From Bugula neritina (taxonomy: Eukaryota > Animalia > Bryozoa): DNA of 64,000 bases. A model generated the notes under the pieces. That model did not search any database, was not told where the DNA came from, and saw only the letters and a list, made by a program, of their open reading frames with translations. Made by a program: the position numbers and the translations under genes. Shown one piece after another: positions 1 to 8,988 of this stretch (positions within the stretch are counted from its first letter, which is position 1; each line of letters opens with the position of its first letter). The DNA is taken from contig OZ037767.1 in the NCBI GenBank assembly GCA_964035545.1, forward strand, positions 14,307,801 to 14,371,800, read 5' to 3'.

Positions 1-1039
1 TGAGTAAGATACACATCCAACTTTACTTGTTTGTCTCCTCCTCCATGTCTTTTCTTATTATCCTTTTTAAATTCCTTTACAAATTTCTGCTCTGCATGCA
101 GCTCATCACTTGTAAAAAGCCGGTCTCTACTCTCATCACCATGGTAGTGCACAAATAAATATGTTCGAGATGACGGAATGTAGGTATCTGTAAAAACCTT
201 CCAAGCACTTTCTACAAGAAATATCGATCCAAACTTGTGTAAAATTAATTTAGATCAATATAACATTTGCTATGGTAGGTTGGCAATTATTTTAAATTAG
301 TCACTTTAATATCTGCGTTGCATATTTATACAGCCATACTCACCATACAGTATTTTTTCGAGATGGAGTCGTGTCTCCTCATCTCTATCCTTCATATCCT
401 GTGTGTACTCCCAATCTTCTTCAATACCCAAATACTGTGTTAGGTCTATGTAGTCCTGCTCTGTGAAAGCTTCCACAGTGCAGTATCGAGATGTCATCAA
501 GTAACACAATTCTTCTATATTTTGATAGTAAGGTGCAGCTACTTTAATATTCAACTCAAAGTTGTAGTCTTTAGCAAATGCTCTCAACTTTGTAGCACAA
601 TTCTTTCCTCGAGCACCACACGGAGCATAGGTAAGATACATGTCCAACTTTACTCGTTCACTTAATTCGTTCTGATATCTATTGGCATACTCGTTTCTAT
701 AAGCATTCATGAAGTTCTCCTCTGCATGTAACCCCATAGCATTTTGAAAAAATCTATTGTGATTCTCGACACTAGGGTGGCGGTGTACAAGTAAGAAGGT
801 CCTAGACTGATAATAGTTGTTATAGCCCATGTTTTTATAGTCAGACCTGACATTATCTAAAAATTATTTAGACAAGTGTAAAATAAAATAATTAATATTC
901 TTAAGAAATTCTTAGCAAAGTTAAAAAATAGTCACTTCAATATCTACATAATAATATTTGTATGTAATCATATATATATATACTCACTAATCACTCTACT
1001 ATCTGTCAATGGTAAAGGAATTCTTGGTTGATTCTGCAT
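1..1039 (-). CDS. AID/APOBEC-like cytidine deaminase with at least two tandem deaminase domains (gene A; 3' end runs off the window)
   Basis: Hand-spliced exons on the minus strand: 1039-988 (MQNQPRIPLPLTDSRVI, donor GTGAGT, phase 1); 856-344 (domain 1: RTFLLVH...GLHAEENF...KLDMYLTYAPCGARGKNC...IKVAAPYY, acceptor TTTTTAG, donor GTGAGT, phase 1); 211 to <1 (domain 2: SAWKVF...SRTYLFVH...ELHAEQKF...VKLDVYLT, acceptor TTCTTGTAG). All junctions are in frame. HxE and PCxnC are the deaminase Zn motif. Confidence 0.88.
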
Positions 1040-1576
1040 ATTCTTCTAATCCGCTGAAGTTTATTGCAACCAACTATTCATGTGTCTAGTTGTTATCTGA
1101 CACAGCATACGCGGTTGTTGAGAATCACAGGTCAGGTTTTTCAGGTTTATTAACCAATCAACTTGTCTAAAAAGTTAGCAGCCATTGTCATGTTGTTATT
1201 CACTATTGGACAAGTAAACCTAAACTATTATAGGAATAAGGTATAGGATAATTGTTTATTAATAATATTTATTTTGAGAAGTTGTCTGTGTACTCTCATC
1301 TGATTGGTCAGACTATTGAGTATATATAGCCTGAGTACCTACTTTATGGAATTATAATTGACAAAGTACACACTAAACTATATGAGTCATATTTATACCC
1401 AAGAACTAAGTATATTTTATATATCTAATCTAATATCTCGCGCAATAAATACTCAGCTACAGGATAATATGCAGCAATATACTGCCACATGCTTCATTAT
1501 ATTTCATATGGCAACACTATCAGTACAGTAAACCTGAAAAGGGTCAGCATTTTGTACTATTGCATGTATTATACTT

Positions 1577-2230
1577 ATTTTATGCAGTAACACTTATAAT
1601 ATGATATACGTATAATAGGAAGATATTAGAGCAACCTACAAGCAATGGGGATACCCATCAAATAATTCATAAGCTAAACACTTACTAAGATAGAGTGTTG
1701 AGTGAAATATTAATAATTATATTATATGCCATCACATATGTTACTACATATAATTTTAGTCCAGTATAATAAAGCGGAAGTAGACTATAAAATATCTTTG
1801 AGTAACAAATTGTATTTAGTGCCAACTTTTCTATTAAATACAGACAATAATATGCTTAAATAATCAACTTCTTAACTTGCCCAGGATTTTGCTGTTAAAA
1901 TGAAAGTATTTATAGGTGACCCAAAGATTTTTCTGTTATAAACTATAGTGTATATAAGAAGTGCAACTGAGTTAGATTGAATAGTATCATTAGTTGATCT
2001 TAGTAGGAATTTTGACATAAATTGTAATACAAAGTTAACAAAATACAGTAAAATTTTTCCTTTTGTCAATCAGAGAGGTAAACATCTGTACAATAATTAT
2101 ATATAATCTAACACACATTTGGTATAACTCTACAACTAACATATAGTTACAGGTAAAGTAGATAAAGGAATGCAGCTGCATGCAGAAAAGTATAGGTCAA
2201 GTAAAACAGGTTAAAATTCCCAGAACTCAG
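1577..2230. repeat. Local segmental duplication, module A (copy 1)
   Basis: Collinear with about 11283-11930 and about 16150-16730 (shared strings include ATTTAGTGCCAACTTTTCTAT, ACACACATTTGGTATAACT and GTTACAGGTAA); an internally deleted copy lies at about 13515-13690. Confidence 0.85.
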
Positions 2231-2392
2231 TTTTATAAATGGACCAGCTCTACATGAACTCAGTTAATTGTTTAGTTCAGGTCCATCTTGCTTCAATTTT
2301 ATAAATGGACCAGCTCTACATGAAATCAATTACTTTTTTAGTTCAGGTTCATCTTGATTCAATTTATTAAGTGGTCCAGCTCTATATGGGCT
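2230..2392. repeat. Short tandem repeat, about 67-bp unit, about 2.5 copies
   Basis: TTTTATAAATGGACCAGCTCTACATGAA...TTTAGTTCAGGT(C/T)CATCTTG occurs at about 2231 and 2297, with a partial third copy at about 2364. Confidence 0.75.
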
Positions 2393-3093: not shown

Positions 3094-3149
3094 TAACATG
3101 GTATATATACAAACATATATATACCATGTATGTATAATAAATATAAATA

Positions 3150-3334
<185 letters not shown>

Positions 3335-4112
3335 ATCTATATATATGTATAATCATATACATAGTTTATGCTGAAAACTATGTTTCAGCTATAGTTAGTA
3401 GGTCTAGTCTTGTGATGCATATCTCATAATACCGAAGTTATCTCTATTATAGCATTTAGCATTTGCACACTACCTATTTTGCTTTAGTTTAGTTTTTAGT
3501 TTATTCTATGCGTTCAGTTGAGCATTTTTAGATCCAGGCTGGACGATTACAGAATTACTAAAGTTCTGCACAGTTTGGCTCCATTGAATATTATCTAAGT
3601 ATGCGATCTTATTTATAACCAGCAATACTTAACTCTATTTCTCTTAATTTTATTATTTATATTATAGATAAATATTTTTTATGTTTTGCAGGTCAAATGT
3701 CACAAAAACATCACAAAATATGCTACCATGTGTCGATAAATTACAGATAAATACTGATTCAAACACGAACATGACAGTAAAGTCACAGTTTTATAATTTA
3801 AACTCCACTATATCATACTCAACCAAAAGTTTAGAAACTTGAGGCTTGCACATTACATAAATTTATAACAAATATTTTGTAAACTGCTCAACTATATAGA
3901 AAAAATTCTATTAATGTCACAAAGAAAAGGTGTTCATACTTACAAATACAAAAAAGTGATCTCCATAGAATAAATAACAATAATTAAAATGTAGTAAATT
4001 CTACAAATTATAAAATGCTATGTAAAACTATTTTATGTTAAATTCAATTTGAAATCGTATTAAGTTCACTCAGATTATAGATGTATATTTTTGACACCAT
4101 CTCCCAACTCAT

Positions 4113-4794
4113 CTAGCTCAATAATCTACGTATATCTATGGCTTCCATTCTTTCGTTGGTTCGCTCATCTCGATTTATCATAGCCTGTGTTCGCTGCCAG
4201 CCATCTTCCAGTGGAAAACCTAAGTACTCTGCCAGCTTCCTGTAATCTCCATCTGTGAAACCATTCACATCAGTGCAGTATTGAACTTCCATCAATTCAC
4301 CTAATTCTATTTCATTTTTATAGTAAGGTGCAGCGGCTTTAATATTCAACTCAAAGTTGTATTCTTCAGCAAATTCTATCAGCTGCCCAGCACAATTCCT
4401 TCCTTGAGCACCACACGGCGCATAGGTAAGATATATGTGCAACTTTACACGTTCTACGTCTGTTTCTAATCTGTCCCCATAATCTGCTCTGTAAGCATTC
4501 ATGAAGTTCTGCTCTGCATGTGACCCCATAGTATTTTGAAATAATCCATTTTTATAACCAGTAGAGTGCACAAGTAAGAAGGCCTTTCGAGGAAAATGTG
4601 AAATGGCGATGTTTTCATAGTCTTTCCAAACATCATCTAATGGAAATATTTAGACAGGTGAAAAATAAATTAATTAATATGAAAGATTAACAGACTACAG
4701 AAATATTTATTGTCATGAATAGTATCTTCATGTAGTCATACTTACTAAGCTGTTCTTGTGTCAAGGGTAAAGCAATTTTTCCTTGATTTGCCAT
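4113..4794 (-). CDS. AID/APOBEC-like cytidine deaminase, single domain (gene B, paralog of gene A)
   Basis: Exons 4794-4746 (MANQGKIALPLTQEQL, donor GTAAGT, phase 1) and 4636-4113 (DVWKDYENIAISHFPRKAFLLVH...GSHAEQNF...KLHIYLTYAPCGAQGRNC...IKAAAPYY...RRLLS-stop). Same intron position and phase as gene A and collinear with gene A domain 1. Confidence 0.88.
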
Positions 4795-5065: not shown

Positions 5066-8000
5066 GCCTAGGGCCACACTGTGCGTATTTTCGCATGCAA
5101 AAATTGAAATCACAAGTAGCAAAGGTGTCCACTGTACGTGCTGAGAAAACATTCGCACTTGTCGCTCAGCATTCTGAACGCAGGTGCGAATCGTCTCTGT
5201 CGTCATCACCTAATTAGCTGGTAGTTATTCAGCAAGCTCAATTTCTTTATTTTAGTGCTACATTCCAGTAAATTGCGTTTTATTGAAAATGAGTGCGATT
5301 TAAAAATGAAAGCTTTATTTATCACGCATCACTGACGCTACAGTGGACACCTTTGCTACTTGTGGTTTCAATAGACCATGTAAGATTGGTACATTTAGTA
5401 CCTTGAACCAATTCTAGAATATCACCACTATAACTTATATAAACTTCTGCAAGTTCAAATGCAAAATGCATACTTCTAGGAAATAGCTGTGCAACTTTTA
5501 TTGCATGCATTATTTTATTTCATATCTTAAATTTATGAATCATGAGTTCATTTTTCAAAATGTTTATTTTAAGTGCTTAAAAAATGCAAATAGAAGGTAC
5601 AAGTTTAAAAAAATACCCTGGTGCGAATTGACCACAGCCCCATCTGTTTTGGCAAAACACATTTAATGACATATTCATTGACATAGTGGTAAATGGGCTG
5701 GTTGTTTATGGCAGATGGCTAGCCACGCTGTACTGCAACTTTATACAATTCTGATTGGCTAGACTCTACATGACCAGCTATTGATTGTATCTGATTGGCC
5801 TAATAATTCATTTGCATTTGAAAATGTAGAGTTTTATATAAGTTATAATGGTGATATTTTAGAGTTGGTACACACCCCTTTTTTGGTTGAGTTTTATAGT
5901 CTGATCACGCTGTAGTCATCTACAACACTTCAGTGTATGGGGAAATTATTAGTATTACGAAATCTGTTTTGGCTTATATTGCTATGCCAGTTTTCTGACT
6001 TAGTTTTTAATCAACTATATGTAGGCTGTTATAACTTAGGGTGATTTCATCAAAGGTAGACATTACTTCGGCCTTAGAACATCAAATCAACCAGTGCTGT
6101 TACTTGGTTTTATTGTAAAGCAGTAGTGAGAGCATAGCACACTAGCACAGTCACCTAGCTGCAATGGCAGTGGCCACACTAAACTCACCAGTTTTATTAA
6201 AATATCTTATGTAAGGCACTTAAAAACACTAGCCTAGTCTGTTAGTATGTAGAGCAGTAACACAGTGACAGCAGTCACACCATCCCTCTCTATCTTGTCT
6301 ACCAAGTACAGAGGTTGCAAAAATAAAAATCATTTCATGAATTAGTTTTAAATCAATGCATACTACTAAATACATTCTCATAGTCTGATTATTTTGCGCT
6401 TCAGTTTACTTAAATGTAATAATTTAAAAAATTGCTTCACACGCATATTACAAATGCATTAACCTACGCTAACCATAAATTATTTGCTTGTGTACTCACT
6501 ACTGTTTTATTTTAAATTTATTTAGCATTAGCTTTTTTAATCAATCACATATTAATCTGCAAGAGTTTAATTGCACAGCTATTAGCAATAGATAATGTAG
6601 ACATTTTGTATAAAAATTAGTATTAACATGTAATGCCTTGCATGTGGGTCTATATTGCCAGTTGGTATCATCATCATATAATACCACGTTGATAACACTT
6701 TCTTGTATACAATTTACTTAGCGAAACAGCATGATTATCCTACAAATGTAATAACATTAGCCATGGGACAATATAGTCCAGAATCTTGACTCTAGATTCT
6801 TTTAACTGTGAAGTAATCTGCCTCAAACCATTGCTGGATGAACTGTCTACACTTAGCTGTGGAGCTACTGCAATAACATCAACAATTTTACTAATGAGTT
6901 TTCAATACATGTTTTTGTCAGTTGGGTAAAATACAAAGGTTCTCTGGACTGCTAGAATAAATGGTGATTAAACATTGGATTTGATGGACATTTTTTTCAT
7001 ATTGTGTGATGCAACATGATGTTACAGAGAAAACGCTGATCCCACCAAAACTGTAATGAAGGCATTATATTTCAACACTGACTGCATGCAACATTGTTAC
7101 TAACAGAATATTATCCATACATAAGTTTGTATTTTGCAAAAATAAGCATCGAGTCTGAGCTGCCATTTTCTTTCACCCAAAAACCATTAATATCAGACTT
7201 TAGCTTACAAAGCATAGTGGTATAGCACAAGCATATACAATAGCACACCAAGAAGAATATTATTATAAAGTGCTACACTTTATCGGTTACCAAGGGTGGC
7301 TGCAGAGAGCACAGCAGACTATTATAATCTTATCTAAAAGAGGTGCAAACAGTAAGCTTACACCTCCAGGAATATTTAGGATATAAAGTCCTTTATGGAT
7401 TGATTGCTCTTTTAACCTGGATTCTAAAAATAGCAGTTAATTTAGTTTAAAGTTACTGCATTCTAGTTAGTTGAGAATGGCCTTTCTTTCCAGGTGGCAT
7501 GGCCAGGAAATAAGTATTACTGTATGAAGATCGCCATGTAGTAGAAATAGGTGTGCTCCGGAAGCACGATAGTGAAGTTTTAATGGCTGGCATATGGTAT
7601 TGGATACTAGCCCTCAGAATGCTTTTGTCATTTTCCTGCCTCAATGGTGGTTGATGATCACTTTGGGCAAGGAAAAATATGTATTGAAAACTCATTAGCA
7701 TAGCTTCAGAGCTAGGTGCAGATATTTCCTCGAACGATGACTTGAGGCTGAGAAGCTCACGTTAAATATCACTTAAAAATGAAGCAAGCTGCTAACAAAA
7801 TTACTCCATAGTAGAAAGAAACTGGACTATATTATCCTATGGCTGATGGCATTGCATTTGTGGGATAAACATGCTGTTTCACTAAGTAAATCATGTACAA
7901 ATTGGTGATGATACCAAGTAACAGTATAGACTAGCATGCCAAGCACTACACGTTAAAGCTCATTTTTATATAAATCGTTGTCTATTGCTAAAAGCTGTGC

Positions 8001-8988
8001 ATTTTAACTTCTGCAAATAAGTATGCAACCAAGTTAAAAATATTACTGTTGTAAATTCTTTTAAGTAAAATAATGGTGGGTACATAAGCAACTAATTTAT
8101 GCTTAGCACAATATGCTTACATGTGTCCGTCAGTGTGCGTGTAAATATATGCTAGTGCTGATAAATATGGTGCAGCACTGCCATTACAGTTTGCTGACTG
8201 TGCTATGCTATTGCTACTGTTTTACAATAGTAACAGCAGTGATTGATTTGCTGCACCTAAACAGTGTCTACCTTCGATGAAATCACCTAAGTTATATAGC
8301 TGCCTATGGTTTATTACAAACCAAGTCAGAAAACTGGCATAGCAATATAAGCCAAAACAGATTTCGTAATACTAATAATTTCCCCATACACTGAAGTGTT
8401 GTAGATGACTACAGCGTGATCAGACTATAAAACTCAACCAAAAAAGGGGCGTGTACCAACTCTAAAATATCACCATTATAACTTATATAAAACTCTACAT
8501 TTTCAAACAAATGAATTATTAGGCCAATCAGATACAATCATTAGCTGGTCATGTAGAGTCCAGCCAATCAGAATTGTATAAAGTTGCAGTACAGCGTGGA
8601 TAGCCATCTGCCAAAAACAACCAGCCCATTTACCACTATGTCAATGAAAATGTCATTAAATGTGTTTTGCCAAAACAGATGGGGCTGTGGTCAATTTGCA
8701 CCAGGGTATTTTTTTAAACTTGTACCTTCTATTTGCATTTTTTAAGCACTTAAAATAAACATTTTGAAAAATGAACTCATGATTCATAAATTTAAGATAT
8801 GAAATAAAATAATGCATGCAATAAAAGTTGCACAGCTATTTCCTAGAAGTATGCATTTTGCATTTGAACTTGCAGAAGTTTATATAAGTTATAGTGGTGA
8901 TATTCTAGAATTGGTTCAAGGTACTAAATGTACCAATCTTACATGGTCTATTTTCGCATGCGAAAATAAGCACAGTGTGGCCCTAGGC
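5066..8988. mobile_element. PIF/Harbinger-type MITE (copy 2) split by a nested 3.6 kb insertion
   Basis: TTA-GCCTAGGGCCACACTG at 5066 and GTGTGGCCCTAGGC-TTA at 8988. MITE parts 5066-5372 plus 8952-8988 total 344 bp, the same length as intact copy 3. Confidence 0.85.
5373..8949. mobile_element. Foldback-like DNA transposon with very long inverted arms, nested inside the MITE
   Basis: Termini AGACCATGTAAGATTGGTAC...GTACCAATCTTACATGGTCT flanked by AT/AT. The empty site TTCAATTTTCG is seen in MITE copy 1. About 630 bp of near-identical arms (5373 to about 6005 versus about 8322-8949), with diverged inverted homology continuing to about 6915 versus about 7670. No transposase ORF recognised. Confidence 0.85.

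What the first reader, a model, noticed from the sequence alone, without database searches (positions are those of the whole stretch)
1..1039. Double-domain deaminase made by tandem intron+exon duplication, convergent with APOBEC3G-type architecture
Seen in sequence: the domain-1 exon (856-344) is phase 1 at both ends and splices in frame (ILY-E-SAWK) to a second deaminase exon. Intron 1 (857-987, 131 bp) and intron 2 (212-343, 132 bp) have almost the same length, the same GTGAGTAT donor and a shared internal string (AAATAGTCACTTCAATATCT versus AAATTAGTCACTTTAATATCT). Inference: the second domain arose by internal duplication of an intron-exon cassette, which could be repeated to give more than two domains. 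Established: double-domain deaminases are best known from mammalian APOBEC3B/D/F/G, so an independent invertebrate origin would be notable. Domain 2 has a much more basic segment after HAE (KEFKKDNKKRH), hinting at specialisation for nucleic-acid binding.
Basis: partly seen in the sequence, partly recalled or inferred. Interest (0 to 1): 0.8.

Follow-up and report, generated by a model that had tools for sequence, protein, structure and literature searches.

The report
Three-domain APOBEC-like deaminase gene, bryozoan
The window's left edge cuts through a probably bryozoan gene in which one short start exon is followed by three (not two) AID/APOBEC-like deaminase domains, each on its own duplicated intron-plus-exon cassette, the middle one having lost its zinc-binding cysteines; this resembles mammalian APOBEC3G and the known two-domain brachiopod enzyme, but no transcript data could be obtained.

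Summary
On the minus strand a 52-nt start exon (window 988-1039) is followed by a 513-nt deaminase exon (344-856). A second deaminase exon starts at 211 and runs off the window.

Extending into the genome (L009) shows:
- domain 2 is a 474-nt exon that keeps HAE but has lost PCxxC;
- a third 132-nt intron follows;
- a third, terminal deaminase exon carries HAE plus PCx6C and the stop.

All junctions are phase 1, and the exon lengths sum to 523 codons. The three introns (131/132/132 nt) share GTGAGTA donors and internal similarity beyond shuffles.

The same chromosome holds a 1-domain gene (window 4113-4794), a second 3-domain gene and a 4-domain gene. Related bryozoan contigs show the same arrays.

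Domains 1 and 2 fold like APOBEC3/AID. Zinc-less domains form one clade and stay open across paralogs.

Two-domain invertebrate AID/APOBEC-like enzymes are already published (Lingula LaAIDL1). The tree suggests an independent origin here. I rate this a new variant of a known kind.

Splicing into one protein is therefore inferred.

The scan had noted this stretch before (s1-466984).

The parts
1053..1078 (-). Conserved 26-nt upstream/5'UTR motif (AATAGTTGGTTGCAATAAACTTCAGC) ending 13 nt before the ATG. It occurs once per gene, never between domain exons.
   Evidence: found once upstream of the ATG in genes A, B, C and D and in the related contigs L013, L015, L017, L018 and L020.
988..1039 (-). 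Exon 1 coding part, 52 nt: MQNQPRIPLPLTDSRVI plus 1 base. Phase-1 donor.
857..987 (-). Intron 1, 131 nt, from GTGAGTAT to TTTTTAG.
   Evidence: z=10.4 against intron 1 of the single-domain gene D.
344..856 (-). Domain-1 cassette exon, 513 nt, phase 1-1. It carries HAE and PCGARGKNC and is predicted catalytic.
   Evidence: translation. (Pfam NAD1 46.9 bits, SNAD4 41.5 bits, cut-off 27). (pLDDT 84.7; best Foldseek matches APOBEC3H/3B/3G and AID).
212..343 (-). Intron 2, 132 nt, from GTGAGTAT to TTCTTGTAG. If it is retained, the reading frame stops at 306-308.
1..211 (-). First 211 nt of the domain-2 cassette exon. The whole exon is 474 nt, L009 9011..8538. HAE is kept and PCxxC is deleted (YLTHSMNDAGQL). 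Beyond the window lie intron 3 (L009 8537..8406, 132 nt) and the terminal domain-3 exon (L009 8405..7876, HAE plus PCGAQEKNC, with the stop).
   Evidence: (domain-2 model pLDDT 86.4, APOBEC3 fold, TM 0.65-0.76).
4113..4794 (-). Neighbouring single-domain paralog (gene D): exon 1 at 4746-4794, a 109-nt intron at 4637-4745, and one deaminase exon at 4113-4636 ending in its own stop. It looks like the unduplicated ancestral layout.

Best explanation
The finding is the 5' two thirds of a gene for an intracellular, three-domain AID/APOBEC-like polynucleotide cytidine deaminase. The animal is probably a bugulid bryozoan.

Gene layout:
- A 17-codon start exon is followed by three homologous cassettes, each consisting of a roughly 131-nt intron and a single-exon deaminase domain.
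- Every junction is phase 1, so the exons read through as one frame of 523 codons (522 aa).
- Domains 1 and 3 keep the HAE...PCx6C zinc and catalytic site and are the predicted deaminating units.
- Domain 2 keeps the fold and HAE but lacks both cysteines. It is inferred to be a non-catalytic module for nucleic-acid or partner binding or for oligomerisation, in the way the non-catalytic domain serves APOBEC3G.

Origin: the array arose by repeated tandem duplication of a unit running from the intron-1 donor to just before the original stop codon of a single-domain gene like the neighbouring gene D.

Shown here: the anatomy, the homology of the cassettes, the folds of domains 1 and 2, the paralog series and the conservation of the open frames.

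Inferred: splicing into one mRNA, deaminase activity, an immune or anti-mobile-element role, and the role of domain 2.
For: Anatomy:
- The exons sum to 52+513+474+530 nt = 523 codons.
- No exon-1-like sequence or conserved upstream motif lies between the domains. The motif occurs once per gene.
- Domain 2 has no Met before its HAE. The in-frame ATG just upstream of domain 3 is not conserved in gene A or L013.

Cassette homology:
- Donors GTGAGTA and acceptors TTGTAG are kept at homologous positions in genes A, B and C and in six related contigs.
- Introns are homologous: z=3.8 to 14.9 against shuffles.

The domains are coding:
- Frames of 150-282 codons stay open in AT-rich DNA across paralogs as little as about 40% identical.
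- dN/dS for domain 2 between genes A and C is 0.59 at dS 0.34.
- Zinc-less domains form one clade, support 92/86. The catalytic plus non-catalytic array therefore predates the split of genes A/C and B.

Family and fold:
- Pfam NAD1/SNAD4 score above cut-off for domains 1 and 3.
- A PDB profile search hits APOBEC3H.
- Models of domains 1 and 2 match APOBEC3H/3B/3G and AID.
Against: - There is no transcript evidence.
- No protein model longer than 282 aa from this lineage exists among 1.84 billion representatives.
- The only named relative, Bugula neritina EB796_010653, is a single-ORF model that reads through the donor.
- The one Logan contig found (L016) is unspliced.
- dN/dS values of 0.46-0.91 show weak constraint.
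- In the four-domain paralog, domains 2-4 have lost H or C ligands and domain 4 is truncated after LMTS, so some cassettes may be decaying.
- Retaining intron 2 or intron 3 gives early stops, so shorter isoforms are possible.
Confidence: 0.68

Rival explanations
1. Cassette choice instead of concatenation. Because every domain exon is phase 1-1, exon 1 could be spliced to any subset of them, or an intron could be retained. One locus would then give a set of one-, two- and three-domain isoforms. The full three-domain protein would be a minor product or absent.
For: - All cassette exons are symmetric, and all introns share the same donor and acceptor types.
- Retained intron 2 stops after 12 codons. 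Retained intron 3 stops after 2 codons.
- Alternative splicing is reported for other AID/APOBEC-like genes (PMC5889660).
Against: - A zinc-less domain 2 has no obvious use alone, yet it is conserved as an open frame in many paralogs. That argues it is expressed together with a catalytic domain.
- Short introns of 123-144 nt with strong consensus sites favour constitutive splicing (inference).
Confidence: 0.2
2. The layout is a tandem array of separate single-domain genes or gene relics. Only domain 1, with exon 1, would be expressed, ending at the stop at 306. Domains 2 and 3 would be untranslated duplicates or independently transcribed units.
For: - The read-through ORF 306-830 exists.
- An ATG lies in frame 4 codons upstream of the domain-3 acceptor in this gene.
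- Domain 2 has lost PCxxC, and domain 4 of gene B is truncated.
- AID/APOBEC-like pseudogenes in tandem arrays are known (PMC5889660).
Against: - Only 131-144 nt separate the domains, with no copy of exon 1 or of the conserved upstream motif.
- The domain-3 ATG is absent in gene A and in L013.
- Domains 2 and 3 stay open with in-frame indels only (for example a 24-nt difference in domain 2) at dS about 0.3.
- Neutral AT-rich sequence would, by my estimate, carry a stop about every 14 codons.
Confidence: 0.08

Closest known systems
Lingula anatina AID-like deaminase 1 (LaAIDL1; Liu et al. 2018, PMC5956068)
   Same: - It is an invertebrate (lophophorate) AID/APOBEC-like protein with tandem deaminase domains in one polypeptide.
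- It is the best named hit of the profile outside the bryozoan clade (P0045, E=1.1e-6, 2 matched stretches).
   Different: - LaAIDL1 has two domains and both keep H-x-E. The mutant used in the paper changes H81/E83 and H298/E300. Here there are three or four domains and the internal ones lack the cysteines.
- The two Lingula domains pair with each other (100/100), apart from all the bryozoan domains. The duplications are therefore independent, or were homogenised separately.
- The exon structure of LaAIDL1 was not examined here.
Mammalian double-domain APOBEC3B/D/F/G
   Same: - Tandem deaminase folds with one non-catalytic domain.
- The genes lie in a lineage-specific tandem cluster.
- Structural matches have TM 0.65-0.78.
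- Signs of recombination between paralogs.
   Different: - From established knowledge: APOBEC3 Z domains are each split over several exons, double-domain genes arose by fusion of neighbouring genes, and the inactive domain still binds zinc.
- Here each domain is one exon joined by a duplicated intron of about 131 nt, the inactive domain has lost both Cys ligands, and there are up to four domains.
- Sequence identity is only 15-21%.
Classical invertebrate AID/APOBEC-like deaminases (Krishnan et al. 2018, PMC5889660); Pfam NAD1, SNAD4 and Inv-AAD
   Same: - Pfam NAD1/SNAD4 score above cut-off.
- Lineage-specific expansion in a tandem cluster, most of the coding frame on one exon, and mosaic paralogs.
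   Different: - Bryozoa are not mentioned in that paper ('bryozoa' and 'Bugula' gave 0 occurrences).
- The sections of the paper I read (6 and 12) and the passages shown by the term search describe no multi-domain cassette arrays or zinc-less internal domains.
- The NAD1 clade proper is a vertebrate clade, so the Pfam hit shows superfamily membership, not orthology.

Membership tests
AID/APOBEC-like deaminase (AAD) superfamily | Zinc and catalytic motif H-[AV]-E ... P-C-x(n)-C | tested here: met
   Domain 1 has HAE...PCGARGKNC and domain 3 has HAE...PCGAQEKNC. The six-residue spacer is longer than the PCx2-4C I recall for vertebrate APOBECs. That comparison is from memory and was not tested.
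AID/APOBEC-like deaminase (AAD) superfamily | The same motif in domain 2 | tested here: not met
   Domain 2 keeps HAE, but the PCxxC segment is deleted (YLTHSMNDAGQL). The same deletion is present in A_D2, B_D3 and B_D4. Domain 2 is a homolog by sequence and fold but cannot hold zinc in the canonical way.
AID/APOBEC-like deaminase (AAD) superfamily | Curated profile match above the gathering score | tested here: met
   Domain 1: NAD1 46.9 bits and SNAD4 41.5 bits against a cut-off of 27. Domain 3: SNAD4 38.1 bits. Domain 2: no Pfam hit, but E=3e-66 against the profile of the locus family, which includes domain 2 itself.
AID/APOBEC-like deaminase (AAD) superfamily | APOBEC-type deaminase fold | tested here: met
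   AlphaFold2 models have pLDDT 84.7 (domain 1) and 86.4 (domain 2). The best Foldseek PDB matches are APOBEC3H/3B/3G/3A, AID and APOBEC1, with E from 1e-9 to 1e-6 and TM 0.61-0.78. Domain 3 was not folded.
AID/APOBEC-like deaminase (AAD) superfamily | C-to-U deamination of ssDNA or RNA | not testable with these tools
   Needs an enzyme assay or an E. coli mutator assay.
Multi-domain (APOBEC3G / LaAIDL1-type) deaminase | Two or more deaminase domains in one polypeptide | tested here: inconclusive
The genomic phases, the lack of internal start exons and the conserved splice sites all fit.
Multi-domain (APOBEC3G / LaAIDL1-type) deaminase | Common descent of the multi-domain state with LaAIDL1 | tested here: not met
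   The N and C domains of LaAIDL1 are sisters (100/100) on a long branch, outside the bryozoan domain groups. Separate homogenisation by gene conversion cannot be excluded.

The most novel reading that the evidence does not exclude
Bugulid bryozoans may carry a modular 'deaminase array' system. Catalytic cassettes and zinc-less AID/APOBEC-like cassettes, each one exon with its own short intron, would be duplicated, swapped between paralogs by recombination, and possibly chosen by splicing. This would produce proteins with one to four or more domains.

Two observations fit this. Identity between genes A and C breaks sharply at the cassette boundary. The zinc-less domain family is large and diversified, and some members carry coiled-coil inserts. 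Together these would make a combinatorial innate-immune diversification mechanism not described for this enzyme family.
Probability: 0.2. Interest if true: 0.8.

Novelty: new variant of a known kind. Interest (0 to 1): 0.55.

Why it matters
Multi-domain AID/APOBEC enzymes are central to mammalian antiviral defence, and how the second, inactive domain arises and what it does are studied almost only in APOBEC3.

This locus appears to preserve the steps in one genome: a one-domain gene, three-domain genes and a four-domain gene. They were built by a very simple mechanism, tandem duplication of a symmetric intron-exon cassette. An inactive domain emerged independently of mammals and of Lingula.

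If it is expressed as predicted, it would:
- extend the family to Bryozoa;
- show that loss of catalysis in an internal domain is a recurrent outcome;
- offer compact single-exon domains for testing what non-catalytic deaminase domains contribute.

It is not a new kind of enzyme, and two-domain invertebrate forms are already published.

Tried and rejected
- Frame continuity was checked by arithmetic on exon lengths, and each exon was handled by reference.
- Transcript-derived models: the word search and the full profile search returned only ORF-style calls of 282 aa or less from this lineage.
  - The Logan contig L016 is unspliced.
  - The B. neritina model EB796_010653 is a truncated single ORF.
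- Literature: 'triple-domain' with APOBEC3, and 'three deaminase domains', each gave 0 papers. 'bryozoan' with APOBEC gave only incidental mentions.
- The exon-length 'mod 3 = 0' column is not independent evidence, because my script only accepted phase-compatible sites. I do not count it.
- Domain 2 as a basic nucleic-acid-binding domain: rejected as a general property. Net charge is -5 here, +4 in gene A, and 0 and -1 for the zinc-less domains of gene B.

Full report
**1. Observation.**

- The ATG is at 1039. A 52-nt coding start exon ends in A|GTGAGTAT.
- Intron 1 is 131 nt (857-987).
- A 513-nt exon (344-856) encodes a deaminase domain with HAE and PCGARGKNC.
- A second G|GTGAGTAT donor lies at 343, and intron 2 is 132 nt (212-343).
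- The acceptor is TTCTTGTAG. After it the frame continues (…KILY-E-SAWKVF…) into a second domain with HAE that runs off the window.
- The shared intron string and the KEFKKDNKKRH stretch are present.

With 9 nt trimmed at the donor end and 8 nt at the acceptor end, local alignment of intron 1 with intron 2 gives z=3.8 against dinucleotide shuffles (1 of 300 shuffles reach it).

**2. Extension beyond the window.**

The window is G000:C3:14307801-14371800. I fetched the left flank as L009, where window position = L009 position − 8800.
- Domain 2 is a 474-nt exon (L009 9011..8538). It ends in A|GTGAGTAA, again phase 1.
- Intron 3 is 132 nt (8537..8406) with the acceptor TCTTGTAG.
- The third deaminase exon (8405..7876) carries HAE, PCGAQEKNC and the stop.
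- The exon lengths 52+513+474+530 nt sum to 523 codons, so the frame is continuous by arithmetic.
- Every exon was used by reference.

It does not keep PC-x-C: the segment is deleted (YLTHSMNDAGQL).

**3. What the domains are.**

- Pfam places domain 1 in NAD1 (46.9 bits) and SNAD4 (41.5 bits), and domain 3 in SNAD4 (38.1 bits). The cut-off is 27. Domain 2 matches nothing in Pfam.
- A profile of the eleven domains of this genome hits APOBEC3H chains in the PDB (E=4e-4).
- AlphaFold2 models of domain 1 (pLDDT 84.7) and domain 2 (86.4) both have the deaminase fold.
- Their best Foldseek matches are APOBEC3H, 3B, 3G, 3A, AID and APOBEC1, with TM 0.61-0.78.
- Exon 1 does not look like a signal peptide (read by eye), so the protein is probably intracellular.

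**4. The paralog series.**

A six-frame search of the genome finds eleven domain exons, all on the minus strand of C3 between 14.25 and 14.31 Mb. They resolve into four genes.
- Gene D (window 4113-4794): start exon, 109-nt intron and one domain ending in its own stop.
- Gene C: the gene of the finding, three domains.
- Gene A (L012): three domains.
- Gene B (L011): four domains.
  - Only domain 1 of gene B has HAE plus PC…C.
  - Domain 2 has TAE, domain 3 has SAE and no PC, and domain 4 has DVE and no PC.
  - Domain 4 is cut short after LMTS. Its remaining sequence appears to continue in another frame (read by eye).

Other features of the series:
- Every inter-domain junction has a GTGAGTA donor one base after a codon, followed by a pyrimidine-rich …TAG or …CAG acceptor.
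- Inter-domain introns are clearly homologous across genes (z=12-15) and weakly homologous to intron 1.
- A conserved 26-nt motif just upstream of the ATG occurs once per gene and never between domains.

The duplicated unit therefore runs from the intron-1 donor to a point a few codons before the ancestral stop.

**5. Relatives elsewhere.**

- The best named sequence relative is a Bugula neritina hypothetical protein. The genome is thus most likely a bugulid bryozoan, an inference from this hit and from the 216-Mb genome size.
- JGI metagenome contigs carry the same arrays.
  - L013/L014 hold a three-domain gene close to gene A.
  - L017-L020 and the B. neritina contig L015 hold two or more consecutive domain exons with the same splice motifs.
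- Zinc-less domains are numerous and diverse (P0019, P0021, P0023, P0024, P0026, P0027, P0029, P0033).
  - Some carry a K/E-rich repeat insert of up to about 120 residues at the position of an 8-residue insert in gene A.
  - Some carry acidic C-terminal tails.

**6. Are the extra domains coding?**

- All of them are open for 150-282 codons in DNA of about 18-33% GC in the introns.
- Between genes A and C, domain 2 has dS 0.34, dN/dS 0.59 and a 24-nt in-frame length difference. Domain 3 has dN/dS 0.91 and domain 1 has 0.46.
- Constraint is weak, as in other fast-evolving AID/APOBEC-like clades (PMC5889660), but frames are maintained.
- Domain 2 has no Met before HAE.
- The ATG in front of domain 3 in gene C is ACG in gene A and in L013.

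These points favour one multi-exon coding unit. They do not prove it.

**7. History.**

In a maximum-likelihood tree the zinc-less domains (C_D2, A_D2, B_D3, B_D4, P0021) form one clade with support 92/86.
- The cysteine loss therefore probably happened once.
- It also follows that a catalytic plus non-catalytic array predates the split of genes A/C and B.

The two domains of Lingula LaAIDL1 are sisters (100/100), apart from the bryozoan domains. The multi-domain state thus arose independently in the two lophophorate lineages. Separate gene conversion is the caveat.

**8. A mosaic between genes A and C.**

- The two genes are 93-100% identical from at least 1.5 kb upstream through intron 2.
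- Identity drops to about 80% exactly at the intron 2/domain-2 boundary.
- It stays low through intron 3 (76%) and domain 3, then rises again in the 3' flank.
- Because the intron is as diverged as the exons, this looks like exchange of a two-cassette block by recombination, not selection on the protein.
- Similar mosaics were reported for other AID/APOBEC-like paralogs (PMC5889660).

**9. What is known.**

- Krishnan et al. 2018 describe invertebrate AID/APOBEC-like clades, tandem clusters, pseudogenes, mosaics and alternative splicing. They do not mention Bryozoa.
- Liu et al. 2018 describe LaAIDL1 of Lingula, with two tandem deaminase domains and mutator activity in E. coli, and compare it explicitly with APOBEC3B/D/F/G.
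- My searches found no paper on three or more domains.
- The profile search of 1.84 billion representatives returned only 56 hits and no multi-domain protein model from this lineage.

**10. Limits.**

- The exon-length column is circular, because the script only accepted sites in the compatible phase. I do not use it.
- Domain 3 was not folded.
- The species name is inferred.

**11. Verdict.**

- The sequence observation is confirmed and extended to three domains here and up to four in a paralog.
- The cassette-duplication mechanism is well supported.
- Expression as one protein is likely but unproven (about 0.68).
- Cassette-choice isoforms are the main alternative (about 0.2).
- The thing is a new variant of a known kind, of moderate interest.

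Noticed in passing
window 4113-4794 (minus): A single-domain paralog (gene D) has its own start exon, a 109-nt intron and a stop. It shares the 26-nt upstream motif with the multi-domain genes and looks like the ancestral layout.
   Followed up: partly
L009 9013 (window ~213), compared with L012: Identity between genes A and C falls from 93-100% to about 80% exactly at the intron 2/domain-2 boundary and recovers in the 3' flank. This points to exchange of a two-cassette block between paralogs 55 kb apart.
   Followed up: partly
L011 1575-4310 (C3:14274075-14276810, minus): A four-domain paralog (gene B) has only its first domain with intact HAE and PC..C. The fourth domain follows a 517-nt intron and is truncated after LMTS, and its remaining sequence appears to continue in another frame. 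It may be partly decaying.
   Followed up: partly
L019 111-959 (protein P0023); also P0019: Zinc-less domains in related bryozoan DNA carry a K/E-rich, repeat-like insert (EEELxELMK units, up to about 120 aa). It sits at the spot where gene A domain 2 has an 8-residue insert, and may be an expanding coiled-coil.
   Followed up: no
window 2227-2388: A 66-nt tandem repeat of 2.5 copies, 87% matches, lies upstream of the gene.
   Followed up: no
window 3102-3363 and L009 6880-7480: Long (TA)n microsatellites of about 260 nt and about 600 nt flank the gene on both sides. They could favour unequal recombination in the cluster.
   Followed up: no
L013 1745-1919: Intron 1 of the gene-A-like copy in the JGI contig is 175 nt instead of 131 nt, because of an internal tandem duplication of about 44 nt.
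   Followed up: no
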